DNA of 64,000 nucleotides from Zootoca vivipara (Eukaryota). The notes beneath the pieces were generated by a model. The model did not search any database and was not told the DNA's origin. It saw only the letters and a program-made list of their open reading frames with translations. Location of the stretch: assembly GCF_963506605.1 (NCBI RefSeq), contig NC_083281.1, positions 56,792,001 through 56,856,000 of the forward strand, given 5' to 3'. Positions 11,247-64,000 of the stretch are shown here, one piece after another (the first letter of the stretch is position 1; the number at the start of each line of letters is the position of its first letter). The position numbers and the translations under genes are program-made.

Positions 11247-11548
11247 TTGGAACATGGGAAGCTGCCTGAGTCAGACCATTGGTCTATCTAGCTCAATACT
11301 GCCTGCGGTTACTGGCAGCAATGGCTCACCAAGTTTCAGGCAGGGAGGTTCTCTCCTACCCCTACCTGGTGATGCTGTAAGGCAGGCTTCCTCAACCTCA
11401 GCCCTCCAGATGTTTTTGGCCATGATCCCCTAGCTAGCAGGACCAGTGGTCAGGGATGATGGGAATTGTAATCTCAAAAACATCTGGAGGGCCAAGGTTG
11501 AGAAAGCCTGCTGTAAGGGATTGAACCTGGGATATTTGCAAAGCAGAT
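11247..11548 (-). mobile_element. tRNA-derived SINE (Squam3-like) interrupted by a MITE
   Basis: gaacatgggaagctgcctgagtcagaccattggtctatctagctca...gggattgaacctggg; boundaries approximate. Confidence 0.55.
11383..11510. mobile_element. hAT-type MITE nested in a SINE
   Basis: TIR caggcttcctcaacct...aggttgagaaagcctg; 8-bp TSD ctgtaagg at 11375-11382 and 11511-11518. Confidence 0.9.
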
Positions 11549-17199: not shown

Positions 17200-18140
17200 G
17201 CAATGGGCAAGCAGCGGAGTCAGGCGGGTGAGGGAGGGAGGGCCGCACCCATGGCGGAGAAGCCCTGGCGCCCTTGGACATCTTTTCCCACTACATCCTA
17301 AAAAAAGCCATCTTGTGGTGGGACCAGGAAGGCCAGCGGACGCCAAGACCACCGAACATCGGGCCTGGATAGCGGCTGCTCTCCCAGTTTGTCCAGGGCC
17401 TGCCTTGGGCCTTTCCAGACCCGCCCTGACTTCCTCGACGGCTGCTGGAAAGGCGCCCCTCGGCAAGGGCCGGCAGCGAGGAGCCCCCTCTGTCGGGCGG
17501 CGGCTCCCAAGCGAGATGGGCACCTGCCGCCCACCTCCACCAGCCCCGGCCAATCTCCGCCCAGGAGGCGGCGCCGCCGCGCTCACCTGGGACGCCCCAC
17601 CCAGACCTTCCTGCGCGCCTCCAGGCTACGAGCCATGGCGGACGCCGGGAGAAGACCCGGGCAGCCGCGAGACTGGCATCAGGACCGGCCGGCGGGGGTG
17701 GCGATAGGAGAGCAGCCGTGGCCGTGGCAGCAGCAGCAGCAGCACCGCCCTCCCTCCCAAGGCACCACACTGGCCTCTTTTGACGCCCCTGCCGAGGCCC
17801 GAGGCGGAGGCGGCCTTCTGGACAGGCCGCTATGTCGCGCCCTGTGCACGGCCAGAGGTGAGGGCCCCGGGCCTGGTTAGATGTCCCTACTGTCCCGCGA
17901 TGGGGTGGGTCAGGGCGGTACGATGTCGACGACACGCCCCCTTCCCTTCGTGGGCCCGGGCTGCGATGTGTGTGTGTGGGATTGCGTTTGTAGCTCCTCC
18001 CCCGCTGCCCGCAGGTGAGCTCGGTGTGGGCGAGGCCACTGGCAGCTTCCCCCGATGGGGCGGGCAAAAGGGCTGTTGCATCGCGGGGACGGTGTGTTTA
18101 CCCCCTCTTCGCAGGCTGCCCAAAAGTAGCGAGGGGCACG
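17200..18140. promoter_or_regulatory. CpG island / MARVELD3 promoter
   Basis: High GC and CpG density around the first coding exon. Confidence 0.8.
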
Positions 18141-19580
18141 CCTCTGGCCTCACAGCTTGCTGGCAAGTGGGGCAGTGAGTGATTGCTGCTCAGCCGTCAA
18201 GGCAGATGGGCAGGTCTCCCCCCCCTCCCACTTTGCTCTCTCACAATCCTCAGGCTTCTGTGGTCAGCACAAGCTCCCTCCAGGGACAGGGGTGGCACCC
18301 AAGCGGCTGCCAGGTCACCCATGTTTCCTCCCAGCCTAAAACAGGGGTGAATAAACTTTTTCAGCCCAAGGACCTTATTCCATTCTGGTCAACTTTACAG
18401 GGGCCATATGGCCAGCGTGGGTGGGGCAACAAATGCTAATTTATTCACACATTCCTCTCTCCCTGTATCCCCACCAGGGGAGCAAAATAAATTATCAGAA
18501 TTTATCTTGCTCCCCTGGTGGGGAGCATTCTTGCAGCAGGTAAAACATGGCAGGGCGTGAGGTGAGGCTTGTATGGGGCATGGGGACCCTGCCCCCTGGG
18601 GAAGTCCCAAAAGCCATGTAGAGGAACCCAGATAGCCGTATTAGATGCCTGGGGTTCCCTATCCCTGGCCTATAACTAAGGGTGAAACATGAGGGGAGCT
18701 CTGAGGTCACTAACCCCAGGAATGAAAAGTCTTTCAATGTGGCATTGGGGCAGAGGATCCCTGGTAGAAGAAGGGAAGGATGGATCGTCACTGCCTGTTC
18801 AGATATGCTCCCTTAACCCCAGTAAGACTTGGGATCCAATCCACCCACAAAGCTGACCTCTATGAGTGGGCCTGGAGGGGCCAAGTGCCTTCCCCATTTC
18901 TTCATCTTCCACACAGCACTAGAGAAACGGCACTAACAGCACCTCTCTGCCCTTGCTTCTTCTTAGCCTGCTGCCAACAGCTCCAGCTCCTCCTCTGCAT
19001 GCTGATTGTCATCTGCAGCTCAGTCTCCTACAATTCAGCAGGTGGCTACACTGGTCTTTTCAGCCTGGGGAGCATTTACTACTACCAATACGGCGGGGCC
19101 TACAGTGGCCTCAGTGGAGCTGACGGGGAGAAAGCACAGCAGTTGGATGCCCAGTTCCACCAACTCAAGGTGCCACCGGCCCAGGTGGCCATGGCGGTTG
19201 GAGGGGCGCTGATGGCCTTTGCCTGCTTCCAGATTGTGGCTAGTCTCTTTCGAGTGCCCTGGCATTGCCCAGCCTGGCTGATAGTGGAGGCCGTTCTGGA
19301 TGTGGCCATTGCAATTGGTCTTGTGCCAGCTTTGTACTTCTACTACCACCACCTTCACGAGATCTATGCATCCTCTCTGTGCAAAGAGCGAGAGAACCTC
19401 TACCAGAGCAAAGGCTACAGGGGCTTTGGCTGCAATTTGCATGGAGCAGAGATCGCTGTGGGCTTCTTTGCTGGGGTGGCCATTGTGGCCTTTGCTGTTG
19501 GCGTTGTGTTGGCTGTCCGTGGCTTCAAGATTGTCCGGACCCTCCAAGCAAAACCATCATCACACAGCTATGAGCACTAG
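17635..19580 (+). CDS. MARVELD3: MARVEL domain-containing protein 3 (tight junction); exons 17635-17857 and 18967-19580, 278 aa as modelled
   Basis: [15 protein letters not shown]|ACCQ...[13 protein letters not shown]...[11 protein letters not shown]...[14 protein letters not shown]...[13 protein letters not shown]...HGAEI matches the ACCQ-type terminal exon. Phase-1 GT-AG intron; Kozak gccATGG. An additional upstream exon cannot be excluded. Confidence 0.92.
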
Positions 19581-24682: not shown

Positions 24683-42028
<17,346 letters not shown>

Positions 42029-42714
42029 TTAAGTCTTTAAAACAGTACCCCACGAGAAACTGTAGAGAGAGGCTGGTAGGGTCTCCTAGCTGGCCTTGGT
42101 TATCCTGACAGAACTCTCTATGGTTCAATCCACGGTGTTTAGGTATTTATCCCAAGTCAGCCATCTCTGCCACAGCTGGGACTCCAGAATATTTCAGCCT
42201 CAAAAAGTCTGTCTTCCCTGCAAGTGGCTTAAGATATCTGTAGTAAGGAAAGAGACATGGTATGTAATGATGTATTCGCTGCAGCTCTGTCTCCACTACT
42301 GCATGTGCTCTTTACAACACATACAGCTCACCTCTCCTGGCAAACCCAAGAAGCTGATACTTTTTCCCCTGTGGCTGGTCCCTAATCACCAGGAATTTCT
42401 GCCTAAATTTGCATACCAGCACAGATAGGAGCCTCCTCCCTCCTTCTGCCATCCCCAAATAAGGCAAAAGTCCTAGATTAATCAGCGACTCGCCCTACAC
42501 GACCTTCCTGAGCCTTGGATTAAGCCCTGCTTGTGAAAACAAACCCAAGGTTGAAGCAAACCAAATTATGCAGTCATAGAAGCATCTGAATCTGCCCGCC
42601 CCAAGGTGAAGGTGTATTTACAGGATCTAGCAAACCACAGGAACACCTCTGGCTCAAACCCAAATATTCTACTTCACTCTGGATTTGCTTTTCAACTAAA
42701 GGAAACTCCCATTA

Positions 42715-43577
42715 CCGTGTTTCTCATATTTTAAGGCATCCCTAAAAAATAAGGCATGGCAGGATTTTCAAGACCTTGCGAAATATAAGGCATACCCCAA
42801 AAATAAGACATGAGCAGGACCCGGCAAAGGCAGCAGTGCGCGCTTTGCCGAGCTCCAAGCCGGCGGCGGGCTGCTGCTTTCCCGCTCAATTTCCCTGCCC
42901 CCTCTCGCGAGACTCGCCGCCGGGTCCGCTCTCGCGCACATGGCCCGGTGAGAGGGAGCCTCCCCTGCGCGCGCGTCTGCGCTCACCCTCCCCCCTCCCT
43001 CCCCCTTTTCGGCCCAGCGCGCCGCCTTGCCTGTTCGTGTGCCGCGCATGTGAGGCGAGCGGGAAGGCAGGAGACCCAGGAGAGCCTGGCGGCCGCCGAG
43101 AACCCCACCACCGCTCTTCCCGCCCAGGACGAGGGGCCCGGAGGAGGAGAGCCCGGCGGCGGCGGAGGAGAAGGAGAAAGAGGCGGCAGCAGCAGCGGCG
43201 ACTCAGAGGCCGAGCTGCTGGACGGGCCTTCCGCGGAGGAGCCTGTGGGGAAGAAGGAGCTGGAGCCCGAAAAAGGCGGCAGTGAGGAGAAGGAGGAGGA
43301 GGAGAAGCCGCGAAGCAGCAGCCCGCCGCCGGCTTGGAGCTCGAGCCGGCAAAGGTACCGTAGCAGCGGCGCTTTGCCGAGCTCCAACAGAGCGGGAGCT
43401 GGCAAAGGCAGCAGCGCGCACGTTGCCGAGCTCCAAGCCGGCGGCGGGCTGCTGCCTTTGCTGGTTCCCACTCAGTCGTGGCTCGGCAAAAAATTAGACA
43501 CCCCCGAAAATAAGCCATAGGCTTATTTTCTTCGGGAAAAAAAATATAAGACATGTCTTAAAATATGAGAAACACGG
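42715..43577. mobile_element. Tc1/mariner (pogo/Tigger-like) non-autonomous element with GC-rich internal cargo
   Basis: TA flanks (42713-42714, 43578-43579); TIR ccgtgtttctcatattttaag...cttaaaatatgagaaacacgg; subterminal AAAATAAG(A/G/C)CAT repeats. Confidence 0.9.
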
Positions 43578-43776
43578 TATATTTCAAAGCAGCCTTTGGC
43601 CCCAATGCATGGGTCACTCTCTGCTACCCTGGTCTGTTTATCTTCCAAACAAAAAGAAATAAATTATCCACAAGGCAGGAGGAAAAAGTATTATTTTCAA
43701 GGCCCGGCATACATTACTGCATAATACGAATATGTACATTACTTCTAGGAATGAGAATGGTCATTCTGATATTGTA

Positions 43777-44000
43777 CAGTTGTACCTTGGTTCTCAAATG
43801 CCTTGTGACTCAAACGTTTTGGCTCCCAAACGCCACAAATACATAAGTGTTCCGATTTACGAACTTTTTTGGAAGCCAAACATCGATTGAGTACAGGAAG
43901 CTCCTGCAGCCAATCAGAAGCCGTGCCTCGGTTTTTGAACATTTTCGGAAGTCAAGCGGACTTCCGGAACAGATTCCGTTCGAGAACCAAGGTATGACTG
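43777..44000. mobile_element. Tc1/mariner-type MITE
   Basis: TA|cagttgtaccttggttctc...gagaaccaaggtatgactg|TA. Confidence 0.88.
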
Positions 44001-45862: not shown

Positions 45863-48547
45863 CATTAGTTTCCCAAGCTGATTTTATAAGGGCCTCCTCA
45901 CATCCAACTTCCACTACCGTATAATTACAGAGCCATCACTTTCAAAAGAAGGTGGCTGTCAAGTAGGAGAAACAAAGCAAGGACACAGGCCTTTCAGGTC
46001 ATTCTGCTAGTGCTAGCTACAGAGCTGGAAGGGGACCTCACAAATCATCCTAGTACAACCTCTTGCAGATGGATGGAGGAGACATATTACTACACACACC
46101 AGCCCCAGAAGGTTTTAAAGCAGTAGCTGGATGGCCACCATCTTCCAAGGTATTCTGAACTGCCACTCTTTGGTAGGCTGAACAGTCCTACCTGTCAAGC
46201 AGAGTGTAGTCAGCAGGTGGGTGAAAGACATGGTCTCTGATGAACCTTTCACTTATGAAGGCAGCCCTGTATCAGGAAGTTTTTAATGCTTGACATCTTA
46301 TGTTTTTCTATGCGCTGGAAACCCAGCCAGATGGGTGGAGCATTATTATTATTTGAAAACTTCAGCATTAGTTTTTTTCTTTAACATTGATTCCCTACTT
46401 TTCCATCCCAAAACAGAATGTTCAAACCACTGAACCACCATCATAAATCCTAATACTAATAAAACAGCACAACTCACTCTAATGCAGCAGCAATATAAAT
46501 CCAAGGCGCACACAGAGGAAAAACATCTGAAAAATGCATGGCTCAAGCCATACTGTTCTGACCTGTTGCCTGAAGAGAAAAAGGACGCCATCGGCTGAGT
46601 CCATGGAGAAGAGTCTCATAACCAAGGAGCCTCCACCATCACCAAGAAAGCCTAACCACATATGTCCACATGCCATAGGTGGGCCCCAGAGCAGGGCTTC
46701 CCTTCAGCAGCATCTGCAGCAAGCAGGCAGTTACCTACAGAGGAGCTGATTCCATGGAGTTCCAAACCATCCAGGCAGAGACTGACTCTAGGTCAAGTTT
46801 TCTTGAACTCTAATAATGTGCTCTCAAGCCCATTCTTGGGATCAAATGGCTGTTTTCATTCCTGTTATCAGAAATAGTTCCCCTATTCCGGTCCTGTTTA
46901 CTGGGTGATTTTGCATTTATCCAACCAACCTCATTCTGTTAACTATATTTCTGGACTTTGCTTCCAAATCAACATGCAAAAACGATTCCCCTTCTCCAAA
47001 AGCCTCCCTTTCTGTTAGCGAGAACAAACATGCTTCCCAAGACACTCCTCTAGCACTGCCCCCTGCAACACAACATGAAGTCGACAAGAAGTCTGCAGCC
47101 TTCCTTCACAGATAGTCCATGTGCTGGCTGCAAGCAGAGGACTCTGTTCAGGCAGAGAAATCCCATCAGAGCTCTCTATAGCCACCAGTCTCCAAACTGG
47201 AGGCTTCTCATTAAGGAAATATTTACAGTTACTGTATGCATTCTTTCATTCCACAATTTACATTTGCCACCAACATAGGGACATAGTAAGCTGCCTTCTG
47301 TTTGTGTCAGACCACTGGTCCATCAAGCTCAGAACGGTGACCCTGGCACCTTCTACTTGCAAAGCTGGTGCTCCACTACTGAGCCAAAGTCCTTCCCCAT
47401 GCCATTATTGATTCATGCATGTTATTAGATGATTTATGTCCCCAGAGTATCCAAGGTGGTTTATGGAAAATAAACCACAGCACAAACTGCAGGTATTTGC
47501 AGGATACTGGAGACTGACCAGACTTCCAGGTCTGATCATCTGGTGACAGAGAAGCAGAATTATTTCCCTTTCCCCAAGTGCTGACCAGGGTAGACCCATG
47601 CCTGCTAGAGAGTCTTGTGCCATCTCATGCCTTCCAACCCACTTATTGCCAGTTCTGTGTGGATTCCTTAGGAAAGGAAGCTGTTGCCATAATTACACAG
47701 GAGGATCCTGGTGGATCAGAGCAAGCATACGACCCACAGTGAACCAGCTCCTTCCATGTTTCACGAACCAGCTTCAGTTTCCATCCAAAGCTCTGCTTAA
47801 TGAACAAACCCACTCCCAGTTAAGGAGAAGGCTCTCAGGCTGCCTCTAGGATCCAGAAGTACTCATGATCTAACTTCTACTAAGACACTTTGGAAGAGCT
47901 TCATAGCAAGTCACCAGCTTCCAGAGTAGCCAACATACCACAAGTGCCTTTATTAAGTATGACATTTTAAAAATAATCTCTGGTAAACAGATGTTTAGTA
48001 AGAAATGCTCTGATAGCTATCTGTCTAATGTGGCATTCACTCACCAGGATGGAATTTCTGGTTGCCTATGACTACCAGGTGAGTTGTTAGGTACATGCAA
48101 GGCTGTCCTAAAGCTCATCTTGCAATACTAAAGTTGACCCCACCTCTCTTCAGGTACTCCAAGGAATGAGTCACAAGATAAACCAAATATAAGAACTCTT
48201 TCAAAGTAGCAACACTCTTAACGGAACTTTCACAATGAGGGTGGGTCCTGATACATACCAGGTACAGGGTTAGCTCTACAGAACAGAAATTTGGGATCTA
48301 CCTCAGGCAGCAAGAGGTCTCAAGACAGCACTGTTCAGATTGCAAACAGTTTCTGATTGCAGGCCCAAAAAAACTCTCAGAAGATGCCCAAGCTGAAGAA
48401 ACAATAAAAACAGGTCTTTGGTTCAAAAACACCTGCAACTACTCCTAAAATCCAACTCTGCCATAAGATGGTCAACATGCAAGCCAACATACAAAGTAAA
48501 GTTTATTAACTATGTTTGGGAGGAGAGAGACAGAATGCAATTCACTA

Positions 48548-48783
48548 CCGTGTTTCTCCAAAAATAAGACACCGTCTTATATTTATTTTTCCTCAAAACA
48601 CACACACTATGGCCTATTTTCAGGGGATGTCTTATTTTTTTCCTCCTCCTCCTGCCGCGGCTGGCATTGCTGCTGCGCCTATCATTACGTCTTATTTTCG
48701 GGGTATGGCTTATATTCCTTGAATGCTTAAAAATCCTGCTACGTCTTATTTTATGGCTACGTCTTATTTTCGGAGAAACAGGG
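48548..48783. mobile_element. Short Tc1/mariner MITE related to 42715-43577 but lacking the large cargo
   Basis: TA|ccgtgtttctcc...ggagaaacaggg|TA; repeated gtcttatttt motif. Confidence 0.85.
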
Positions 48784-50599
48784 TACCTCAATGCAGGTAC
48801 GCCCGGAATTAACAGCCAGACTTTGTTAACAAAAAAAGTGACAGTGCAACCATACTACTGGGGGGGAAAGTGTTCTACAAATACAAAAACATCCAGAATA
48901 AGCTCACAGCAGTGTTAGAAACTATGATATGTAAGTTAGGTGCCAAAAGTCTCCTTAAACCAAGGTCACAGTTATCACAGTCACCACAACAGAATATCTA
49001 GTTGCCATTTGAGGGTAAGACAGCCCTAAAGTCTTATTTTTCAAATGATAGACTAATTGTGATTGATTATCAGTGAAACACCTGGCTAGTTCAGATGACT
49101 ACCTTGAACTAGAGAATTAAAGAAGAAAAGTCACTTGATGCAGGGACAGTCCACATATATATTAGCCTATTCCTACGTCTTTTTCTTAATGGTGACACTG
49201 ACCATTCATAACATAGGAATGTTCTTCACAACTGTGAGAAGGTCAGTGGGGTGGGGTGGGGTAAGTGAAGACAAACTACAATAATTAACTAACGTTGCTC
49301 CTGTTCAGGCTGCACACAAAAAAAGCATTTTGGTTCCTGAAATTCATTCTGATTGTGCAGATAAAATATAACTGATAGAATTCTACAGTGTGTGAAAACA
49401 GTCAAGAACCAATGATCCCCAGCCATACACCTGCAGATGGTTGCTATGACAGGCGCTCTCCTAGCATTAGGGCATCTTCACTTGGTTGCAAGTGGTCAAT
49501 AGTCAGGTGCAAAATGCACCTGGCTAATTTTGGACATTGGCCCATAGCCAACAGAAATTCAACAAAGGTTAAGACCACAGCATTCAGACAAAAGACAAAC
49601 ATACTCCAGCTGCAATACTATCTAAAAGCAGGTCTTCCATTTCATGATAGATCTTTGAACTACACCAAACTTAGTCAATGTAACAATTCTGCCCAATCGT
49701 CACAATTTCTTTCAAGAGACACAGAGGATTTTCAGCATACACTAGTTAGACATTTTATAAAAGAGAGGCCCTCTGTCAGACAGGTTCTGTTAATCATTAG
49801 TGATAAGGTAGCACCATCATTCCACATGATGCTTTGCAGAGAATCACATCAATATGAGCTTACAGTTTCTAAATTTTAAATGGCAGATGAAGGAGAAATG
49901 TGAGCAAATACTCCATGTTGCAACAATAAAGGTGAAACCAAAGGCATTAAACAACAGGCTTCAAAGTGAACATGTGTTTTGAGGAAGTGTTTGAAGAGAA
50001 GAGAAAGAGATATAGGGTGTCACAAAGGGTTTCTTGCAAGGAGTTCGAGTCTAGGGGACAGAAAACTGGGCAATCAAGCTGAAGCAACTAAGGATATGGG
50101 CAGGAATATCCATATTAAAATAAAGTTAAGTTTCAGAAGGTCTGCAGATGTTGAGTAACCCTCCTCCAACTGTTACTCATCTACAAGAGTACTGTAGTGC
50201 TAGATAACTCCTTCACAATCATTAACCTCAGTAGGAAAGCAACTTATCTCATTTGTAAGACCCTTAGGAATTCTTACCATCAAGTGGAATAAAACTTTTG
50301 TTAAATAAAAATAAACAAATATTTCCCTCTTGACAGAAGGGCAAGAAAAGGAACTGCACTGGCTTCTTCAAGTCAAGTTGACAGGTGAGCCAGCTGGCTG
50401 GACTGCCCTCTCACTTCCCTGCACCCACCCCTGGGTCTTGGCCTTTCCTTTCCCCAGCGCTCACTGAACAGCCATTCTTTGCAAAGCGTCGGAATCCACA
50501 TCCAACAGCCTTGAGCCTTTTCCTAGTGTCGACCCTGCCATAAACGGGAGTGACTCAGTCTCTTTCCCCGACGAGGTGTTCCTAAGCCCCTTGCTCACA

Positions 50600-51800
50600 G
50601 GGTCTGTCAAGGAGCGAGCCGAGTCTCTTTCTTCAGGCCTCGGGTAGGAGCCGATCCGATCGCCGGAAGCCCGGGCGAGCTGTACGGGGGTGAACTCCGG
50701 CACGGCGCGCGGAGAAGACTCTCCTCGTCTATAACAGAAGAGGCCACAGGTACTTCCGAAGACGCCGACAGCAGAGACAGAACTGGCCGGGCGAGGAGAA
50801 AAACGCCTCGAACAGCGGGAGGGAAGTCATGAGCTAAGGCTGGCCTTTGCTCAGGACGCGGCGGCGCGGAAAAGGGAAGCGGACGGAGGAACAGCCACCT
50901 CTTGCCCGGGAGGGCGAAGGGCCGCTCCGGCAGGGGCAGCAGCACCGCCAGGCCTCACTAGCCAGCTGGCGAGTCAGACGGCAGCAACCCTCGCGGAACA
51001 CGGCAGCGCGCTCCCTTCTTGCGCTAGGAACCGGCGTTTCTCCCCTTAGCCAGCCGACCCGCCCGCCGACCGGAAAGCGGCCGAGCCCTCGGCGGCCAAG
51101 GCTCAATCAGTCCCGGGAGGCGGGGCGGGAGGTGGCAGCGGCTGGCTGGGCCTTGCCCCGGGCAGCGGCGGCGGGCCCAGGATCCTACCGCCGAAGTAGA
51201 AGCATCAGCAACCCCTACGCTGCCTGGCAGCGCCCCTCCTCTCTCCCCGCGCGGGACTCACCGGGCCGGATCCCTACGGCGAAGGCGGCGGCGGCAGTAA
51301 CTAGAGCCTGGCATCCAAAATGGCGGCGGCGCGGCCTCAGCACCGATACCGCAGGCGGAGGAATCTGGAGACCGGGACTTACTGACTGCTCTCTCTCAGA
51401 GCACAGCGCGGCGATAGCCTGCTGCATCCATTAACTTTGCTGCGTCCTCCGTCGCCGCCGGCCGGTGCGTTTCCTGGCCAGGCAGAATGCTCGGCGCTTG
51501 GAACCGCGGTAACTGGCCCCAGAACTCGTTTCCTCCGCGGAAGTATCTGTAGCGGTGTCACACGATTAGCGGTGAGACTGCGCCGTGGCAGGTAGTGATG
51601 ACGTCAGACGCCTGCCTAGTCACCGCTGCGGCTGTGCTCACGACCTGCGTCCGGCCGGGTCGTATTAGCGAACATTAAAGTTCCGTTCTGGATACGGAAC
51701 TTGCCCACAGCCCGAGAGGCGAAGCGCCTGCCGTCCTTCGAGGAAAAAAACAGCTGACAGGGCGACTGAAGCGTCTTCGCCAATTGCGAAGTGCCGGGGG
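50600..51800 (-). promoter_or_regulatory. AP1G1: AP1G1 CpG-island promoter and non-coding first exon(s)
   Basis: Minus-strand donors ccg|gtgagt (exon end 51262) and tca|gtaagt (51383); YY1 motif ccgccatttt near 51320; full CRE TGACGTCA at 51599-51606. Confidence 0.75.
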
Positions 51801-53189
51801 CTAGCCTGACAGTAGCGGGGCCAAGTCCTACAGACCACTTGCTTTCCTTGCAAGATCAATCTTAAGCAAGTTTACTCGAAAATATATCCCAATGCATTGG
51901 ACATACACAGGACTGCAGGCTTTGCACGGAGCTCCAGTGTCCCGTTTCTGAGGCCGCAGAGACACGAAGACGCTTGCTGGCAAGCGCCTTGTTTGAACGT
52001 GGAGAGCCTCTCGGCTCAACCTCCTCTGATTTGCGTGAAGCAGTTTTCACTAATGTGGCCGATACATCCATTTCAGCTCTGGCCTCTCTTAGGGCTCTAC
52101 AGTTCCGCGGCTAGTATTAAGGTTTGGGGGCTAGAAAGCTTCGCCACGGGATATATATTGGTCACTTCAATCGTTATCTCTGATAGTCGGCGGCGGCGGC
52201 TTCTTGCACTGCTTCCGCCTCCCATTAGGGCATCTGGCTAATCGCTGGGAAACAGATGGGGAAACTGTAGGAAGCTGTCTTAAATTGAGTCAGTCTCTTG
52301 GTCCACCTAGCTCAGTATTGCTTACACTGGCGGTCAACAGCTTTTCACGGTATAGGACAGGATTCCTCACTCTGACCTACCTGAAAGTGCCTGCCCAAGT
52401 CTGGTCCTGTCTGCACGCAAAAGCACATGCAGCCCTTCCCTTCCCTCCTCCACTTTCCTTAGTTTGATCTAACGGACAAGCAGAGTTCTTCCTAGGATCG
52501 CGCCAGAAAAGCGGCTTTTTTTTAGTTGCAAATCGATGGGCGACAGGAGCCCCACGGAGAGCATTCTTCTCTTTCTCACACAAACAAAGGAGAAATAATT
52601 AATCAACTCAACATCGAGTGACAGCTCTATCCCATCTACATAGCACCAGCAAGCTATTCCTGTCCTGGCCAGTATAAGGCCAAGCCACTTTTATGCTTGA
52701 AGGTTGGAAAGTGCTTCGAGAATTGTTGCCCTTGTAAAAGGAACCCGTGCCGTGCAGAGTCTGTGACTGAAGCGGCCTGGCTCTTTGCGGGTTTGGACAC
52801 ACTGGCTGCCTACCCACACAGAGACCGGTTCCTTGCCAGGATAGCGTGAGGCTCCTATTAAAGGTCTCGCTCTCTGATTTCCCTTCCTTGATTTGCTTAG
52901 CGTGAATTTCACTGTGGCCATAATTTACGCATCTTCTCGGTTTAAGGCCAGGAATAGCCAGCCGAGAAGCAGCGCCAGCTTATTCGCTCCTTTCAGCAAG
53001 GCCCCGTGGGGGCGCTTCGTTTTTCCTGCCGCAAAGGCACGAGGCTGGCGGCTTCATCATCTTAATAAAGAGGCACACCACACAGTGGAGAGACCGCTTC
53101 AAGTGCACAAGCATGGCTTATTATTTCTCAAGCCAGACCTCAGCAGTCCTTACAACAACCCTACAGGTAGGCCACGGAGTAGAGCTCGG

Positions 53190-53600
53190 GGGGGATGCCG
53201 GGGCGCGACGTCACGTGCAGAGGGGAAGGGCAGGTGCGTTTGTCGCTATAGCGATGCCGCCGCCGCTTCCTCGACTGTCGTTATGGCAACCGCAGGCGGC
53301 GTCACGTCATCGCTGTGCGCTGTGCGCGCGCCGTCCTAACGTCATGAGTCTCGGCAGTTCCGGCGCGCCGTGCAAGGCGGCGGCAGCGGCGGCGGAGAAG
53401 AAAGAGGGCGGGGTCAGGCCCGGGGCGGCTGCGGAGTCGGCGGGCAGAGGGATGGCACTCAGCCGTGGAGGCGGCGGCGGTGGCGGCGGGTGAGCGACAG
53501 GAGTGTTCGGGGCTCTCTTCCCGCCGCCGGGGGGAAGCCGCCCGCATGCCCCCCCCGCTGACCCCTGTGCTCTTCTCTATGTCTTTGCAGGTGATCTCGC
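53190..53600 (+). promoter_or_regulatory. ATXN1L: ATXN1L CpG-island promoter and 5' UTR exon
   Basis: CRE/E-box gacgtcacgtg, RFX X-box gtcgttatggcaac (53277-53290), donor cgg|gtgagc near 53489, acceptor tttgcag| at 53590. Confidence 0.7.
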
Positions 53601-53675
53601 CCGGAGACCCCCTTGAGGAGGAGAAGGAGGAGGCGACAGCAGCAGCCCACCTTGCAGCTTCCCGAAGCGAGCGCC

Positions 53676-55658
53676 ATGAGAGCGGCCCAGGAGCGGGGCC
53701 AGGAATTCCTCCCCCCCAAGAAGCGCGATCTGCCGGTGGCTGCCAGCAACGAAGAGCCGGGGCGGGCGGCTGAGTCGGGTCTGGTGGGGTGTGGCGGCGG
53801 CGAGAGCTCTGTGGAATGGTCCCGGGGCTCGGCAACAAGCAGGCAGAGCCAGGCACCTTCACGTTACACGGAGGCTGGTGGCAGCTCCGACACAGTGACC
53901 AGTCTTACCGTGGACCAGTACGGCTTATTGTACAAAGTGGCGATGCCCCCGGCCACCTTCTCACCCGTGGTGAATGTCAGCCCGCTGTCTCCGGCCTTCA
54001 GTATGACCTCACAGCTGATCCCGCACCCTGGTATCCCCTACTCGCCTATCCATTACACTCAACTTCCTCCTGCTCCCTTGCAGTTTGTGGGATCACACTA
54101 CTCTGTACCCTATGCTGCCGCTGTGCCTCCTGGCTTCCTGCCCAGCCACCTTCTGTCCTCTTCAGCCAGCCTTGCTGCCTCTCATATCCCACACTTTGTG
54201 CCCTATGCACCTCTCCTGGCTGAAGACTCTGCTCCTCCACAGGCAGCCCACAGCTTTGGCAAGACCAGTGCCTCAGTTTTGCCTTCGGGCCCTCTGCAAC
54301 CCCATGTTGGAGGTCAGCCACTGGATGTTACACAGGGCCGAATTCCAGTCTATTATCAGATGTCCCGTCTGCCAGCAAGCTATTCATCATTTGAAGCTTC
54401 TGTTGCTGGCCCAAACACTGAGCAGCCTCTGCAGGAGAGTCAGCTAGATCCTAAAGTCACAGCAAATGGGGTGCAAAGGTCTGCCGTGGGGGCGAAGGAA
54501 AGTGAGGCTGAAGGGCAGTGGCCAAGCACAACGGTAGAGTGCAGCACTGAAGGTACCTTCTTGACAAGCAGTCAGATTTTGAGAACAGAGATCTCTGTGC
54601 CATCTCAGCGGAGCACCCCAGATACAGACCTGGAAGTGCAGAGGGTAGTTGGAGTGCTTGCTTCCCAGGACTACCCTGTTTGTTCTGCTCAGCAGACGGA
54701 TGGCTTGAGCCCTCTAAACCTTTCCCATCGTAATCCCCCTGAGCAGAAGGCAGAGTCAACGAGGAACCCAGTGGAACTTGTGGTGGCTGCTACTGCTGAG
54801 AAAAGCCACTTTCGGAGACTGTCGGCAAAGTCCCCTGAGGAGCAGCTCCGCCATCGGCAAATACTGAAAGGCATTACAATGGCCAATGGTCGGCCAGTCT
54901 CAGGGTCCCTCCATCCTGGGGCTCAGGATGGCCTGGGAGGTGCAAGTCCTGAGGGAACAGCCCATGAGGGACTACCTGACACGGAATGTGCCCATTCCCA
55001 GAGCCACTTACCCTCCCACTTCATGAAAGGAGCCATCATCCAGCTGGCCACAGGAGAGCTAAAGAGGGTGGAGGACCTGCAGACCCAGGACTTTGTGCGC
55101 AGTGCAGAGGTGAGTGGTGGCCTCAAGATTGACTCCAGCACTGTGGTGGACATCCAAGAGAGTCCCTGGCAGGGTTTCGTGACGCTGCATTTCGTGGTGG
55201 GGGAGCAGCAGAGCAAAGTGAGCATTGATGTGCCCCCTGAACACCCTTTCTTTGTGTATGGACAGGGCTGGTCCTCGTGCAGTCCAGAGAGGACGAATCG
55301 GCTCTTCTCGCTCTCCTGCCACAGGCTGCAGGTGGGAGATGTTTGCATCTCCATCAGTTTACAGAGTCTGAATGGGAGGCTTGTGCCCCAGGCAAGCCCC
55401 CAGAGTGCTACCCGAGAGAGACCTGGGCGGGGTGGGGAGAGTCTCCAGGAGCTGCAGAAAAACCCATTGGAGAAGGATGGAGTGGCAGTGGGCTCCCCCC
55501 AGGAATCCACCCACCATGATCCTGTTTCTCTGCATGGTTGGGCAGGCCCCAGCTTCCAAAGGTCTGGGGAGGAGCCCCGGCCACCACTCCTCCGCCCTTC
55601 ATTCATTCCCCAAGAGGTCAAGTTGTCCATCGAGGGCCGTTCAAATGCAGGGAAGTGA
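53676..55658 (+). CDS. ATXN1L: Ataxin-1-like, single coding exon, 660 aa, AXH domain
   Basis: MRAAQERGQEFLPPKKRDLP; STPDTDLEVQ; AXH domain HFMKGAIIQLATGELKRVEDLQTQDF...EHPFFVYGQGWSSC; C-terminus RPSFIPQEVKLSIEGRSNAGK. True ATG is at 53676; the ORF track starts at an upstream TTG. Confidence 0.97.
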   Translation: MRAAQERGQEFLPPKKRDLPVAASNEEPGRAAESGLVGCGGGESSVEWSRGSATSRQSQAPSRYTEAGGSSDTVTSLTVDQYGLLYKVAMPPATFSPVVNVSPLSPAFSMTSQLIPHPGIPYSPIHYTQLPPAPLQFVGSHYSVPYAAAVPPGFLPSHLLSSSASLAASHIPHFVPYAPLLAEDSAPPQAAHSFGKTSASVLPSGPLQPHVGGQPLDVTQGRIPVYYQMSRLPASYSSFEASVAGPNTEQPLQESQLDPKVTANGVQRSAVGAKESEAEGQWPSTTVECSTEGTFLTSSQILRTEISVPSQRSTPDTDLEVQRVVGVLASQDYPVCSAQQTDGLSPLNLSHRNPPEQKAESTRNPVELVVAATAEKSHFRRLSAKSPEEQLRHRQILKGITMANGRPVSGSLHPGAQDGLGGASPEGTAHEGLPDTECAHSQSHLPSHFMKGAIIQLATGELKRVEDLQTQDFVRSAEVSGGLKIDSSTVVDIQESPWQGFVTLHFVVGEQQSKVSIDVPPEHPFFVYGQGWSSCSPERTNRLFSLSCHRLQVGDVCISISLQSLNGRLVPQASPQSATRERPGRGGESLQELQKNPLEKDGVAVGSPQESTHHDPVSLHGWAGPSFQRSGEEPRPPLLRPSFIPQEVKLSIEGRSNAGK

Positions 55659-58877: not shown

Positions 58878-59013
58878 CGGGCACCCCCAAACTGCGGCCC
58901 TCCAGATGTTTTGGCCTACAATTCCCATGATCCCTAGCTAACAGGACCAGTGGTCAGGGATGATGGGAATTGTAGTCCAAAACATCTGGAGGGCCAAAGT
59001 TTGGGGGTGCCTG
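58878..59013. mobile_element. hAT-type MITE
   Basis: Same family as 8320-8455; 8-bp TSD ctctagcc at 58870-58877 and 59014-59021. Confidence 0.9.
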
Positions 59014-59621: not shown

Positions 59622-62600
59622 TCAGTGCAGCGCACTGGGACTTGGCTCCTCAAAGGCCATTTTACCAAGCAGCTGCCCCTCAAGCTCTAGCCCACCCACT
59701 GGCAGTGGGAAGAAGTTCATCTCGGCTGCCAGTGCAGCCATGGCCGAGGGGTCCTGGCCAAACTGAGCCCGCAGCATCATGTCCATTTTCTCCAGCCGCC
59801 GCTTTAGCCTCTTGGCTTCGCGCTCCCGAATGAGCCGAGCCTGCCGCTTCTCAGGGGTCTCGTTGGCCCGCTTGAGGCGCATCGCTTCACGGTCCCTCTG
59901 CAGGCGGCGCGCACGCTGCTCGTCTGTCTCCTGCATCCGCTGCATCCGCTTGGCCTCTCGATCCCTCATGCGCCTCACCTCACGCTCCTCCGGTGTCTCG
60001 TTGTCTCGACGGCTCTTCTTAGCTGTGCGCTCTCGCTCCAGGCGCTGCAGCCGCACCTCCAAGGGCTCGTTCTGCCTTCGCAAGGCCCATTTGCGAACCC
60101 CTGGAGCTTGAGCTTCCAGAAGCTTGCGGTAGGCCACACAGCTGTTGCACACCAGGAGGATGCCAGCAGGATACACTGTGGGGCTGACAGTAGCAGCAGC
60201 AGCAGCACCACCACCACCACCACCTGCCTTTTCCTCGGCACCAGAAGAAGCCTCAGGGAGGGGAATGGGCAGGGCATCTCCACACAGCACCTCTGACACC
60301 TTCTCACTGTGAACATCAAAGAGTAGAAATGACGGGTGGTCGGCACAGATCTTAAGAAGCCATTGTGTAGGCTTGCAAGCTACTGCCTTAGCTGTAACCC
60401 TCCCCCTCCCTTTGGCCATGCTTACAAGCCACCCCACCCACATGAATGCTGGCCTGGAGAATGCTTCTAGCTGGGGTCACCTATTCCAGCTGCCTCCAGA
60501 AATTGCCAGGTATAACCTCTATTGCTTCCATTGAACCTCTAAATAGGGCCCCTCTAGGACTTCCAAAATGCAGCCTGGGCCAAGTTGTCCCAGTCCCACC
60601 GAGTCAGAGATGCCCACTTCTCACCTGTTGAAAGTAGCATGGCTGGTGAAGCGAGCCCCACACACCGCACAGTTGGACAGCTGGTCCTCGGAGTGGATGA
60701 GGAGGTGCCTGCCCAAGGAGCCCGGGGAGCTGAGTGCTCGGCCACAGACGGGACACAGGTAGCTCTTGGCACTGACCACAGCTGCCGTGTGCTGCAAACG
60801 AGGCCGGGCTGTGAGGCAAGGGCTCCGCCGCCCTGTCCCCCTCTCAGCTGTCCCTATGAGGGCTGGCAGCCAAGGCCATGCCACGGAAGAGCTCCCTCTT
60901 CTGTTAGGGAAAGAAGGAGAGAGACCCGCAAGGCCTTCCCTGGGATGTGGTGCAAACCCACCAGGGGGGATGATTCAAATTGCATCCAATGCCAATAGCC
61001 CCTGCCCCCTTCCCCCCTTTCCCAGTCCAGTCCAGGATTACTAATTTCAGCCTGGAGGGAAAGGGGGAGCCAGGGCAGGGATGGTTTAGCCTTGCGTGAT
61101 GGTCTCATCAAAGCCCCCTCTAAGTACCTGATAGACGTGAGTGACAAGCTGCTCCCTGCTTCCACACTCTAGTTGGCAGAGGGGACAACGGGAGAGTCCC
61201 ATCAGGGTATCTGGGCTGGCATTTAAACCCATCTGCAAGCAAGGAAAGGCAGGCTAAGGAAAGAGCAGAGGACAAGACCCATGCCTGGTATTCTGCCACA
61301 CGCATACACATACCCCCCCCCCAATTGATGCTGCACCAGACCCTTTAAGATCATGTTGAGGGATTATCTGTAATGTAAGATTAGCCCTGCGCAATCAAAT
61401 TGAGGGTCTACCTAGTTGTGCATTGTCTTTCTAACACACAGCGGCCAACCAAATGCCTCTTCTGGGAAGCCCAGAATGAGATGACAACAGCTCTATCACT
61501 CCCCTTGCCCCCATTACAATTAGGGAACTCCAGTGCCAAAAAGCCCAGACCTAATCACTTGAGCCTGCTGTAGTTATCACTTGGACACATCAATGGACCA
61601 GGCCCAAGAATCCCAGGGTGGGCTATACAGTCCCCTTTCTCCATGCTAGGGCCATCCAAGAGTCTGATATTGCTATTCTCCCTTCCACCAAGTAACCACA
61701 GCAGCGTTGCACTTTTGCTTTAGTATGTGTTGACCACGGCCAATGTGATGCACTTGCCTCATGGCCTCGAGCAACCTGCTTGCTGCAGCCCAGCTGCTCA
61801 GTAAGTTCCAGTTCCTTTTTCACTGTCGCTGATGCTCCATCCTCCTCAGAAGCATGGGAGGAGACCTCATCTTGTGTTGTCTCATCCCCCTCGCTATCAC
61901 CTGGAATACAGAACAGCTTTAGGCCTCTGCCACAGACCAGCTGACAGGATTACAAAGCAGCATACAGGTGTTTGGTCTCTGCCAGGTGTCCCAGAGCTGC
62001 CCTCCTGTACCAAATAGGGAAACTCACTGTTGCTGCTGCTGCTACTGCTGCTGCTGGAGTCCTTTTCTTGTGGCGGGGGTGCCAGCTGCTGCATGAGTGG
62101 TGACTGGGCTCCAAGCAGCCCAGGGAAGTCTCTTCTCATCATGGCCTGACGTGTGTGCTCTTCTAACCCAGCAAAGACTTGCTCCCCTGGAAGTACAATG
62201 GGGGAGGAAGAAGCCGCATTAGCCCATTGCCCTTCCCAAGCCCAATCATTCCTTGCCCCCACCTCAGATGCCCAGTGATGGTCTCCCCTACCTGAAGATG
62301 GCCCAGAATGGGACTAATGCCTGGGCTCCATTCCCCAAAACAGCTTTCCCCAAACCCTTCCTGCAAAGCAACTGTGGCCTGACCAATCCGTCCCTTCGCA
62401 TCCTTTCCAACATGACCTGGAAATACAAATGTCTTCAGCAGCATTAAGCACACAGGGAGGGCTCTTGCCTACCCTGGCTCTGCCCTAGCATTTGCATGTG
62501 CTCCCCCACCCCCGGGGCCCAGATTTTGGAAGAGCTTGTCCTGCCATACAGGTTCTCCTCCTTCAGGGGTAAAACTGTTACATGTGTGTAAAAGATTTTA

Positions 62601-63248
62601 GTGTAGGCGATAGCAAACCCACTTATCTACTTTTGCTAGGCAAATTTGAGGTGGGAGACTTATTCTGTGGATGTTGTGGTCCAGGTTTAGTTATCTGCTT
62701 TAGTTCCTCCTTGATACATTTTCTCTTAAGTTGTGCAAAGTGGGCAGTGCTTGCCTGAAATTGCCAGACTCTTTCCTGGGCCTTTGCTATTTCAATTCTG
62801 ATCCTAAAGCTATCATGGTGCCTGGAAGTCCCCTGTTCCTCCTTGTGCAAGGGAGACTAGCCAGCCATTCCCAACTAGTACCGAGAAGCTGTTTTTTGCA
62901 GAAGAAACATCAGTGGGTAAGGTGGCCCAATGAGAGACAGAATGCCACTAGAATGGCGGAGAGGGGTTCTGAGCCCCCATAGTGCCCAAGGAGCCCTTAT
63001 GCTCCAAGAGGTACATGGACATGTCTCAGCTCAGCTAACAAATCCTCGATGCTGGGCAGGGAGTCCTCACCAGGGCTATGGGAGAAGAATGCAGCAAATA
63101 GCGGGAGGGGGGCTGCCCCCATCATTTTGCGGGTGAGGATGCCTCGCTTGGGCGGGGAAAGGGGGTGAAGGTGGAAGTGACAACAGCCCCCCTCCCCTTA
63201 TTACTCACAGTGGACTTTATTGGGGGTGGTCTGTTTCCGACGGGACAT
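59622..63248 (-). CDS. ZNF821: Zinc finger protein 821. Exons: 63209-63248, 62028-62186, 61758-61900, 61128-61232, 60625-60791, 59622-60306; 432 aa
   Basis: MSRRKQTTPNKVHWEQVFAGLEE...; C2H2 fingers CPLCQLECGSREQLVTHVYQH and CPVCGRALSSPGSLGRHLLIH; STPR repeats ETPEEREVRRMRDREAKR. Phases are consistent using one GC donor. Confidence 0.96.
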
Positions 63249-64000
63249 GGTTCCCCCCCCCAGGGGGGGCGCACCTGCGGAGAGAAGAGCCCTGTCACCA
63301 TGCGGGGGATGACCAGGGTAGGCGAGCGGGGGGCGTTTAGAGATAAGCCCCCACCCCGCGCTCGAAAGGAGGCTGCCGCCGCCTCGGCCCTTACCTGAAA
63401 CCGTCGCCCGGCCTGGGCTCGCCCAGCAGCGCTGCAGGAGGACAAAGGGCCGCCCGGGCTGGCAGACAGACAGACAGAGGAAGATGGCGGCACGGCGGGA
63501 GCGCCCGGCTCGTGCACGACGGGACCGACGGACAGACAGGCGGACGGGGGCGCGCTGCGCTGGAGCCCTTCCCTCCCCTCCGAGCGGAGCGCGCCTCCTG
63601 CCTAGCAGCAGGGGCGCCGATCCCGAGGCCGTCGCAGGCGCTCAGCCGGGAGGGGGTCCCGCAGCCATCAGGCCGACGCCTCCGGGGGCTTCAAGCACTA
63701 AGACCAGCCAGCGGGGCCAGAGCTGCTTCCTTCGGCGCTCTCCACGGGCCCGGCTACAGAGGAGGAGGAGCAGGAGCAGCTGCTACAGCTGCTGCAACCC
63801 GCCTCCCTTGCCCCGAGTTGCCTCCTTCCACGGGGCCGCTTCTCCTCTTTTCGGAGCGGGGCCACCGCGGTGCTAGTGGTGGGGCTGCCGCCGTCCCCGC
63901 CTCTTTTCAAGCCACGAGCAGGGGGGCCCGATTGACGCCCCCGCCATGCCCTGCAAGGCGCCCGGCCATTCACGCGAGCGCCCCTACAGCGGGAGGGCTC
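63230..64000 (-). promoter_or_regulatory. ZNF821: ZNF821 CpG island and 5' UTR exon
   Basis: CpG-dense; donor cag|gtaagg (exon end 63395); acceptor cgcag| at 63274. Confidence 0.7.

What the first reader, a model, noticed from the sequence alone, without database searches (positions are those of the whole stretch)
42715..43577. Pack-type Tc1/mariner element carrying an apparent captured CpG-island promoter/exon fragment in AP1G1 intron 1
Seen: perfect TIRs and TA flanks enclose a CpG-rich cargo of about 430 bp (42880-43312). The cargo contains the palindrome TCTCGCGAGA (42903-42912), GC-rich promoter-like tracts and an open acidic Gly-rich frame (ESLAAAENPTTALPAQDEGPGGGEPGG...DSEAELLDGPSAEEPVGKKELEPEK). 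A related element at 48548-48783 has no such cargo. CpGs are intact, so the insertion is young or unmethylated. Known: TCTCGCGAGA is the BANP/ZBTB33-associated motif of CpG-island promoters, and gene-fragment capture is best documented for plant Pack-MULEs and Helitrons. Inference: a vertebrate mariner family may be dispersing host promoter/first-exon pieces.
Basis: partly seen in the sequence, partly recalled or inferred. Interest (0 to 1): 0.8.

Follow-up and report, generated by a model that had tools for sequence, protein, structure and literature searches.

The report
Lizard transposon carrying a host promoter fragment
A small cut-and-paste transposon in an intron of a lizard's AP1G1 gene carries about 390 bases copied from the promoter and untranslated start of another, unidentified host gene and has multiplied to tens of copies; this kind of capture is already described in animals, and the carried promoter looks silent.

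Summary
An 863-bp element (42715-43577) has 25-nt inverted ends with one mismatch, the outer 21 nt perfect. It is flanked by TA on both sides and carries a CpG-rich middle containing TCTCGCGAGA.

Contigs from a related species (organism B) join 42712 directly to 43578 with a single TA, which is a clean empty site. That species lacks this transposon family at 85% likeness or more. It does hold 42892-43278 at single-copy depth, in contigs that run on for 676-880 nt without transposon arms. The cargo is therefore host DNA, not the family's standard interior.

In the source species the arms have word depths of 10^4-10^5. The cargo has about 220-300, against 3-21 for the flanks, which suggests tens of cargo-bearing copies.

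Stranded RNA reads cover only 43041-~43281, on one strand, and mostly carry the letters of organism B's copy. The parent is therefore expressed. This copy is not seen in RNA (0 of 44 reads at 43110).

The "acidic Gly-rich frame" is probably not coding. It has no real ATG and no homologue, and four overlapping frames are open across it. The parent gene remains unidentified.

Verdict: a real Pack-TIR, and a new member of a known kind. The scan has already noted about a dozen similar captures on other DNA of this genome.

The parts
42713..42714 (.). Left TA target-site duplication
   Evidence: Read directly. An organism B contig joins 42712 to 43578, leaving one TA at the empty site (record 17).
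42715..42739 (+). Left terminal inverted repeat (25 nt, the outer 21 perfect)
   Evidence: Inverted pair I4, 96% over 27 nt including the TA.
42715..42811 (+). Transposon arm A (AT-rich, with ATAAGRC repeats)
   Evidence: 74% identical to 48785-48689 of the cargo-less relative. Summed word depth is about 26,000-90,000 in X11 against about 9-28 for the flanks.
42812..42889 (+). GC-rich core repeat S1 of the transposon
   Evidence: 42812-42880 is 90% identical to 43390-43458. Word depth is about 10,000 in X11, absent from organism B. 42881-42889 is assigned to S1 only by eye, from a 10-of-12 match to the sequence after S2 in the sequences (inference).
42892..43278 (+). Host-derived cargo: CpG-island promoter plus the start of a transcribed first exon of an unidentified gene
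   Evidence: Organism B holds it at single-copy depth (13.2 and 7.6) in contigs of 1193 and 794 nt. These run on for 880 and 676 nt unlike the element (records 18 and 19). The cargo is not found elsewhere in the window.
42903..42912 (.). TCTCGCGAGA palindrome (BANP / ZBTB33 motif) in the untranscribed part of the cargo
   Evidence: Only exact copy in the 64 kb. The motif's identity is from the papers listed.
43041..43281 (+). Part of the cargo that is transcribed at the parental locus (probably 5' untranslated leader)
   Evidence: Stranded RNA reads lie here only, all with the first mate on the minus strand, at depth up to 104. They carry parent-like letters and a 9-nt insertion after 43168. 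The only ATG is at 43048, a letter private to this copy.
43279..43312 (+). Unassigned filler at the right junction (GAG repeat; a GTGAG at 43282)
   Evidence: Likeness to both organism B DNA and the RNA ends at about 43278-43282. A GAG array lies at 43284-43304.
43313..43343 (-). Inverted copy of part of the core repeat S, abutting the cargo
   Evidence: 31 nt, 100% identical to the reverse complement of 42849-42879.
43337..43458 (+). Partial S copy (43337-43387) followed by the full core repeat S2 (43390-43458)
   Evidence: 79% and 90% identical to S1. 43300-43500 folds as a DNA hairpin of -78.9 kcal/mol, z = -9.4.
43485..43577 (+). Transposon arm B, including the right inverted repeat (43553-43577)
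   Evidence: 78% identical to 48643-48546. Word depth is about 115,000-238,000 in X11.
43578..43579 (.). Right TA target-site duplication
48546..48785 (-). Cargo-less relative of the same family (TA + 236 bp + TA), in the opposite orientation
41765..41968 (-). Context: first coding exon of AP1G1 (residues 1-67), preceded by a pyrimidine tract and an AG acceptor
   Evidence: phmmer to AP-1 gamma-1 chains, E = 4e-40, residues 1-67.

Best explanation
This is a Pack-TIR: a non-autonomous, TA-targeting (Tc1/mariner-superfamily) miniature transposon. Its GC-rich, hairpin-forming core acquired about 390 bp of host DNA, consisting of a CpG-island promoter (with a BANP-type TCTCGCGAGA motif) and the first ~240 nt of the transcribed leader of an unidentified gene. 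The chimaera was then moved in trans by a transposase and multiplied to tens of copies. This copy landed at a TA 747 bp upstream of the first coding exon of AP1G1, antisense to it, after the split from a related species. Shown: the ends and the TA duplication; the empty site; the single-copy arm-free homologue of the cargo; the excess word depth of the cargo; the one-strand expression of a parent-like copy. Inferred: capture by template switching during repair or replication at the palindromic core. The evidence for this is that the cargo sits between duplicated direct copies and an inverted copy of the same core segment. Also inferred: the cargo-bearing copies are methylated and nearly silent.
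For: Ends and TA. Empty site: an organism B contig runs 42386-42712 and then straight on at 43578-43802 (record 17). Host origin: organism B has no arms (depth 0-3.4 over 42699-42869 and 0 over 43326-43553). It holds 42892-43278 at depth 13.2 and 7.6, like its flanks (13.7), in contigs that continue 880 and 676 nt unlike the element. Not the standard interior: in X11 the arms have depth 26,000-238,000, the S core about 10,000, the cargo about 300-1,400, and the flanks 9-28. One capture, then amplified: a single X11 contig of depth 294.6 spans 43067-43341, across the cargo/inverted-S junction, with 2 differences (record 11). Parent expressed: RNA depth reaches 104 over 43041-43325, with the first mate on the minus strand only. 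Most reads carry the letters that organism B has at 43087, 43102 and 43107, plus a 9-nt insertion. Silence of this copy: 0 of 44 reads have its letter at 43110. Depth is 0 over 42813-42926 and at most 3.3 over 43326-43439. Methylation signature: 5 of the 6 letters that differ from the RNA or other copies are CpG to TpG/CpA. Template-switch footprints: direct S1/S2 repeats at 90%; an inverted 31-nt piece at 100%; a hairpin of -78.9 kcal/mol, z = -9.4. The kind and its proposed mechanisms are described in PMC8277862.
Against: The parent gene was not identified and its locus in the source species' own genome was not seen directly; only RNA from it and the homologue in another species were. Copy number rests on summed contig word depths, which the tool warns are not copy numbers, and two runs give different ratios (about 14-23 and about 70). 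That the other cargo-bearing copies also have arms and sit at different TA sites is inferred, not seen. RNA sense depends on the usual library convention and was not calibrated. About 15% of RNA reads carry the element-type letters at 43087, 43102 and 43107, so some Pack copy or a second parental allele may be transcribed. Only one RNA run was laid, with 6% of it read and the tissue unknown. No autonomous partner is known, so the superfamily assignment rests on the TA duplication and the inverted ends alone.
Confidence: 0.8

Rival explanations
1. The GC-rich middle is the ordinary internal sequence of this transposon family, so no capture occurred.
For: The cargo is multicopy in the source species. 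Its edges are made of family-internal repeats.
Against: Arms are 100- to 1000-fold deeper than the cargo. The relative at 48546-48785 lacks it. Organism B has the cargo at single-copy depth without any arms, and lacks the family at 85% likeness or more.
Confidence: 0.02
2. The capture is real, but the source is not a protein-coding gene's first exon. It could be an orphan CpG island, a divergent or antisense promoter transcript, or a long non-coding RNA start.
For: There is no ATG and no protein homologue. Only a ~240-nt transcribed stretch was seen, and what it joins to is unknown.
Against: A 5' leader without an ATG is equally expected for the start of a coding gene whose first exon was cut by the capture. 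Small shares of the cargo's words occur in runs guessed to be RNA from two other species, which suggests a conserved expressed exon. About a dozen other cargoes noted in this genome are said to be starts of named coding genes (not checked here).
Confidence: 0.2
3. Gap filling happened in place. A plain transposon sat here first and the host DNA was copied into it at this locus without later transposition. This is the commonest origin of animal Pack-TIRs in PMC8277862.
For: This is the majority mechanism in the published survey. The internal duplications look like repair products.
Against: The organism B site lacks the whole element, not only the cargo. The cargo and its junction with transposon sequence have word depth about 295 against flanks of 9-21, so the chimaera exists in many copies. 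In-place filling may still describe the founding event at some other locus.
Confidence: 0.04
4. The open frame is a true coding first exon of an acidic, Gly/Glu-rich protein, and the Pack copies could encode or donate a peptide.
For: The frame is open for 236 codons. The length differences seen in RNA are multiples of three (a 9-nt insertion).
Against: There is no start codon in the cargo. The ATG at 43048 is private to this copy and is followed at once by a stop. ORFs of 162-236 codons are open across the same DNA in two plus-strand and two minus-strand frames, as expected at 71% G+C. There were no hits among 5.8 billion clustered proteins of 42-135 residues, nor among 1.84 billion representatives of any length. 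GGA/GAG repeats slip in threes anyway.
Confidence: 0.05

Closest known systems
Multicopy Pack-TIRs of animals (Tan et al. 2021, PMC8277862), e.g. Pack-hAT-N8_XT of Xenopus tropicalis carrying 291 bp of the CAPSL 5' UTR
   Same: A transposon with inverted terminal repeats carries a few hundred bp of a host gene's 5' end between intact ends. The chimaera has transposed, and the outgroup's matching locus lacks the whole element. TcMariner is one of the two superfamilies that make up most animal cases.
   Different: That survey found only 4 multicopy cases among 370, and its example has three transposed copies. Word depth here suggests tens of copies. 'Lizard' and 'anole' do not occur in that paper's main text. 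Here the cargo includes the untranscribed promoter with a BANP-type motif.
Pack-MULEs of rice and other grasses
   Same: Capture of GC-rich gene fragments followed by amplification. Pack-MULEs are reported to duplicate GC-rich sequences preferentially (PMC5861414).
   Different: A different superfamily (Mutator-like, 8-11 bp duplications, long inverted ends) in plants. Here the duplication is 2-bp TA and the ends are 25 nt.
Ssk-FB4 of Drosophila melanogaster (FoSTeST model, PMC8277862)
   Same: A multicopy chimaera thought to arise by fork stalling and template switching at a repetitive, rearrangement-prone part of the transposon, followed by transposition. Here the cargo sits in a palindromic core flanked by duplicated and inverted core pieces.
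   Different: Ssk-FB4 carries a nearly complete gene and makes a protein. This cargo is a promoter plus leader fragment with no coding capacity and no sign of expression.
Other Pack-type elements noted by this scan in the same genome (ATXN7L2, TRIM24, IQSEC2, AGFG1-like, BMP8-like, MCAT, OSBPL10, EPB41L4B, ALOX5 cargoes)
   Same: Same genome, same kind of event: a 5' end or first exon of a host gene inside a mariner-type or hAT transposon. Several are said to be present in 10-40 copies.
   Different: Whether any uses the same CCGTGTTTCTC family is unknown. This case adds a direct empty site, a single-copy homologue in a species that lacks the family, and RNA alleles that separate parent from copy.

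Membership tests
Tc1/mariner superfamily, non-autonomous (MITE-like) element | 2-bp TA target-site duplication | tested here: met
   TA lies on both sides. An organism B contig joins 42712 to 43578, leaving a single TA. A 3-bp duplication does not fit (TTA versus TAT).
Tc1/mariner superfamily, non-autonomous (MITE-like) element | Short terminal inverted repeats | tested here: met
   25 nt with one mismatch, the outer 21 perfect. The ends are shared with the relative at 48546-48785.
Tc1/mariner superfamily, non-autonomous (MITE-like) element | An autonomous partner with matching ends that encodes a DD(E/D) transposase of this superfamily | not testable with these tools
   No vertebrate genome collection or repeat library was available, and the window holds no such element.
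Tc1/mariner superfamily, non-autonomous (MITE-like) element | Short, non-coding, high copy number | tested here: met
   The cargo-less relative is 236 bp. Arm word depths are 10^4-10^5 against flanks of 3-28 in two runs of the source species. Depth is a proxy, not a count.
Pack-TIR (PMC8277862) | Transposon sequence with inverted ends on both sides of internal non-transposon DNA | tested here: met
   Arms A and B match the cargo-less relative. 42892-43278 does not, and is absent from the bulk of the family by depth.
Pack-TIR (PMC8277862) | A parental copy of the internal DNA outside any transposon | tested here: met
   A single-copy, arm-free homologue in organism B sits in contigs that extend 676-880 nt beyond it. 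RNA of the source species carries the same letters as that homologue rather than the element's. The parental locus in the source assembly itself was not seen.
Pack-TIR (PMC8277862) | For a multicopy case: several copies of the same chimaera with different target-site flanks | tested here: inconclusive
   A junction-spanning contig of depth 294.6, against flanks of 9-21, indicates many copies of one chimaera. Their flanks could not be read.
Active CpG-island promoter with a BANP motif | CpG-island composition and the TCTCGCGAGA motif upstream of a transcription start | tested here: met
   G+C is 71.5% and CpG observed/expected 0.81 over 425 bp. The motif lies at 42903-42912, about 140-190 bp left of where RNA coverage begins.
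Active CpG-island promoter with a BANP motif | Transcription starting from this copy, with an unmethylated state | tested here: not met
   0 of 44 RNA reads carry this copy's letter at 43110, and there is almost no read-through into the transposon core. The substitutions are mostly CpG decay. This rests on one RNA run only; methylation was not measured.
Protein-coding first exon | Start codon and homology to a known protein N-terminus | tested here: not met
   The only ATGs are at 42940 (a stop follows after two codons) and 43048 (private to this copy, a stop follows at once). Protein searches were blank.

The most novel reading that the evidence does not exclude
In this lizard lineage, active miniature transposons of at least two superfamilies take CpG-island promoters and first exons as filler far more often than other DNA. 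A possible reason is that such regions are open, origin-proximal or R-loop-prone templates for strand switching at the transposons' GC-rich hairpin cores. Families like this one have scattered tens of copies of a BANP-motif promoter. A few of these may escape methylation and act as new start sites or binding sites. The set would be a natural experiment on whether a CpG island keeps its state when moved.
Probability: 0.15. Interest if true: 0.7.

Novelty: new member of a known kind. Interest (0 to 1): 0.45.

Why it matters
Gene-fragment capture by cut-and-paste transposons is well known in plants. In animals it was surveyed only in 2021, and almost all animal cases were single-copy products of local repair.

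This case is a clean, recent and amplified vertebrate example in which the whole chain is visible from public reads:
- an empty site in a sister species;
- a single-copy source;
- an expressed parent;
- tens of dispersed copies.

Taken alone it is a tidy member of a known class. Taken with about a dozen similar notes from the same genome, it points to a lizard lineage where capture followed by transposition is unusually common and favours gene starts. That could be used to study how capture happens. It could also test whether a transplanted CpG-island promoter stays unmethylated; here the substitution pattern and the RNA suggest it does not.

Tried and rejected
1. Naming the parent gene from the open frame failed.
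- The word-indexed protein search with 43080-43310 found 6 word-sharing candidates, none scoring. It sees only proteins of 42-135 residues.
- The full HMMER search of 1.84 billion representatives gave 0 hits at E <= 0.001. The query is low-complexity, so a blank is only moderate evidence.

2. The scan's own notes searched by sequence, for arm A and for the cargo, were blank.

3. BLASTN of the cargo against the window gave only 30-33-nt GGA-repeat matches at 53378-53646, so the parent is not within these 64 kb.

4. Rfam on 42600-43700 gave only sub-threshold microRNA-precursor look-alikes on the hairpin, 23-26 bits against gathering scores of 60-168. I rejected these.

5. A full-text search for the end sequence returned only primer coincidences.

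6. I considered a splice donor at 43282 (GTGAG) as the end of the captured exon. It is not adopted as shown, because organism B's DNA likeness ends at the same place (43278). That is explained more simply by the capture breakpoint.

7. Microhomology at the junctions could not be assessed without the parental sequence.

8. Copy number from run X1 (ratio about 70) and run X11 (about 14-23) disagree. I report 'tens' only.

Full report
**What is in the sequence**

The element runs from 42715 to 43577 and has TA on both sides (42713-14 and 43578-79). Its ends are inverted repeats: 27 nt at 96% counting the TA. Without the TA that is 25 nt with one mismatch, and the outer 21 nt are perfect. The terminal 12-mer occurs four times in the window against 0.12 expected by shuffling. 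Those four are the ends of this element and of a 240-bp relative at 48546-48785.

The relative lies in the opposite orientation. Its two arms are 74% and 78% identical to 42713-42809 and 43485-43579, and it has a short, different middle. The middle of the element under study is 71.5% G+C with CpG observed/expected 0.81. The flanks give 0.19 and 0.54. TCTCGCGAGA lies at 42903-42912 and is the only exact copy in the 64 kb.

**Anatomy**

From left to right the element consists of:
- arm A (42715-42811);
- a 69-nt GC-rich core segment, S1 (42812-42880). By eye it appears to continue to about 42889, where 10 of 12 letters match the sequence that follows S2 (my reading of the sequences, not a computed result);
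- the cargo;
- a 31-nt piece (43313-43343) that is a 100% inverted copy of the end of S1;
- a partial direct copy of S (43337-43387, 79%);
- a full direct copy, S2 (43390-43458, 90% to S1);
- arm B (43485-43577).

As single-stranded DNA, 43300-43500 folds into a hairpin of -78.9 kcal/mol (z = -9.4). The foreign DNA therefore sits inside a palindromic, repeat-rich core and is bracketed by duplicated and inverted pieces of that core.

**Evidence from public reads (runs chosen; 1,701 letters laid at 85% likeness)**

(a) Empty site. In organism B, a different species, one contig (record 17, depth 13.7) lies on 42386-42712 and continues without a break on 43578-43802. The whole element is absent and a single TA remains. 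This confirms a 2-bp TA duplication and an insertion that postdates the split of the two species. The flanks differ by about 3.5-4% in letters, not counting gaps.

(b) Source of the cargo. Organism B has essentially no reads on the arms or the S core: depth is 0-3.4 over 42699-42869 and 0 over 43326-43553. It does hold 42892-43176 and 43173-43278 at single-copy depth (13.2 and 7.6). These sit in contigs of 1193 and 794 nt that run on for 880 and 676 nt unlike the element. That is an arm-free homologue in a genome lacking this transposon subfamily at 85% likeness or more, which is what a host source should look like. An older neighbouring miniature transposon (43777-44000) has the same huge depth in both species, so organism B is close enough for this comparison.

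(c) Abundance in the source species. In run X11 (single-copy contig depth about 9-21), summed depth is as follows:

| Part | Summed word depth in X11 |
|---|---|
| Arms | 26,000-238,000 |
| S core | about 10,000 |
| Cargo | about 300-1,400 |

One 275-nt contig of depth 294.6 spans 43067-43341, across the junction between the cargo and the inverted S piece, with two differences. In run X1 the cargo contigs have depth 219-230 against a flank contig of 3.1. The tool warns that these depths are not copy numbers, so I take them to mean three things:
- the family has thousands of members;
- a few hundred members carry the S core;
- tens carry this same cargo and junction.

The cargo is thus not the standard interior of the family. 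The chimaera arose once and then multiplied.

(d) RNA. In a stranded RNA run of the source species (X21, raw reads, about 6% of the run read), reads lie on the cargo only between about 43041 and 43281. All have the first mate on the minus strand, and depth reaches 104. By the usual library convention the RNA is plus-sense. I could not calibrate this.
- Depth is zero over 42813-42926 and at most 3.3 over 43326-43439.
- Most reads carry C, C and G at 43087, 43102 and 43107, as organism B's single-copy homologue does. Two thirds carry a 9-nt insertion after 43168 that this copy lacks.
- At 43110 all 44 reads differ from this copy.

The expressed sequence is therefore a parent-like copy, not this element. 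The untranscribed left part of the cargo (42892-43040, containing the TCTCGCGAGA motif) behaves as its promoter. Small shares of the cargo's words also occur in runs guessed to be RNA from two further species, which is weak support for a conserved expressed exon.

**The open reading frame**

Four ORFs of 162-236 codons overlap on both strands across this 71% G+C DNA, so openness is not evidence of coding. The plus strand of the cargo has only two ATGs:
- at 42940, followed after two codons by a stop;
- at 43048, followed at once by a stop. This A is private to this copy, since every other copy, organism B and the RNA have G.

The word-indexed protein search was blank (it sees only proteins of 42-135 residues). 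The HMMER search of 1.84 billion representatives of any length was also blank. I read the transcribed part as 5' untranslated leader. Because of that, the parent gene could not be named with the tools at hand.

Likeness to both organism B DNA and the RNA stops at 43278-43282. A GTGAG at 43282 could be the parent's first splice donor. The coincidence with the DNA boundary is explained more simply as the capture breakpoint, with the parent's exon running on. The origin of 43279-43312 (a GAG repeat) is unassigned.

**State of the CpGs**

Young is right. This copy differs by 2 letters in 275 from the dominant cargo contig, and by a handful from the parent-like RNA.

At six places (43040, 43048, 43087, 43102, 43107, 43110) this copy differs from the RNA or from other copies. 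At five of them the other form has a CpG and this copy has TpG or CpA. At 43110 organism B agrees with the element, so that change may belong to the parent's lineage. That leaves four of five. Such a pattern is what deamination of methylated CpGs produces. Together with the RNA result it argues that the dispersed promoters are methylated and silent, not protected islands. This is an inference; methylation was not measured.

**Context**

The translation of 41765-41965 on the minus strand matches residues 1-67 of AP-1 gamma-1 chains at E = 4e-40. I found the exon using short motifs recalled from memory. The exon begins at 41968, just after a long pyrimidine tract and an AG, so an untranslated exon must lie upstream.

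CpG islands at 50501-51800 and 53001-54050 are candidates for that exon and its promoter. The element lies 747 bp upstream of the coding exon, inside that intron, with its cargo antisense to AP1G1. 'Intron 1' is plausible, but the number of upstream exons was not shown.

**Most likely mechanism**

A plain member of the S-core subfamily suffered a break or a stalled fork at its hairpin-forming core. The nascent strand switched to an ectopic host template, a CpG-island promoter and the start of its first exon. It copied about 390 nt and switched back, once onto the opposite strand. That would account for the inverted 31-nt piece and the duplicated S.

This is the template-switching logic proposed for animal Pack-TIRs, followed by transposition for the rare multicopy ones (PMC8277862). 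The intact ends then let a transposase supplied in trans spread the chimaera. The capture steps are inferred from the footprints. The transposition of this copy is shown by the empty site.

**Comparison with what is known, and novelty**

This is a Pack-TIR in the sense of Tan et al. 2021. They found 370 in 100 animal genomes, 115 of them TcMariner, but only four multicopy cases. Their example is a 291-bp 5' UTR fragment in three transposed copies. 'Lizard' and 'anole' do not occur in that paper's main text. Rice Pack-MULEs likewise favour GC-rich gene fragments (PMC5861414). The motif is the known BANP / ZBTB33 site of CpG-island promoters (papers listed).

I therefore class it as a new member of a known kind. 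It is notable for its copy number and for how completely the history can be read from public data.

The scan has already noted about a dozen captures of gene starts by mariner-type and hAT transposons on other DNA of this same genome, several called multicopy. Those notes are unchecked and I did not test them. If they hold, the interesting fact is the genome-wide habit rather than this single case.

**Limits and housekeeping**

- The window has no N.
- Read laying was given 1,701 letters.
- No step needed referral.
- The single read-laying run printed only the best-supported loose ends. The letters that follow the cargo in the parent's RNA, which would name the gene, were not available to me.

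Noticed in passing
window 43777-44000 (TA at 43775-76 and 44001-02): A 224-bp TA-flanked miniature transposon with CAGTTGTACCTTGGTTCTC-type ends lies 200 bp from the Pack element. Its word depth is 10^4-10^5 in both the source species and organism B. It is therefore an older, shared family, unlike the CCGTGTTTCTC family, which organism B lacks at 85% likeness or more.
   Followed up: partly
window 42699-42869 and 43326-43577 (arms and S core): This transposon subfamily is extremely abundant in the source species but gives depth 0-3.4 in the related species B, whose flanks differ by only about 3.5-4% in letters. That suggests a lineage-specific burst, or a horizontal arrival, after the split.
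   Followed up: no
window 41765-41968 (-), 50501-51800, 53001-54050: The first coding exon of AP1G1 (residues 1-67) has a strong acceptor 4 nt before the ATG. Two CpG islands 8.5-12 kb upstream on the gene's strand are candidate promoters or untranslated first exons. It was not determined which one serves AP1G1.
   Followed up: partly
window 8352-8424, 11406-11478, 36866-36938, 58910-58982: Four copies of a palindromic repeat of about 73 nt (GGGACTACA...TGTAGTCCC type) are present, probably another miniature transposon or SINE-related family.
   Followed up: no
window 43168 and 43087-43110: RNA reads of the parent-like copy show two different 9-nt insertions after 43168 (50 and 25 of 112 reads). 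About 15% of reads carry the element-type letters at 43087, 43102 and 43107 but not at 43110. These could be two parental alleles or a transcribed Pack copy.
   Followed up: no
window 17301-18200, 59651-60200, 63201-63950: Three further CpG-island-like stretches lie in the window. The GC-rich CAG/CCG-type matches fall at 17720, 50920, 60180 and 63769.
   Followed up: no
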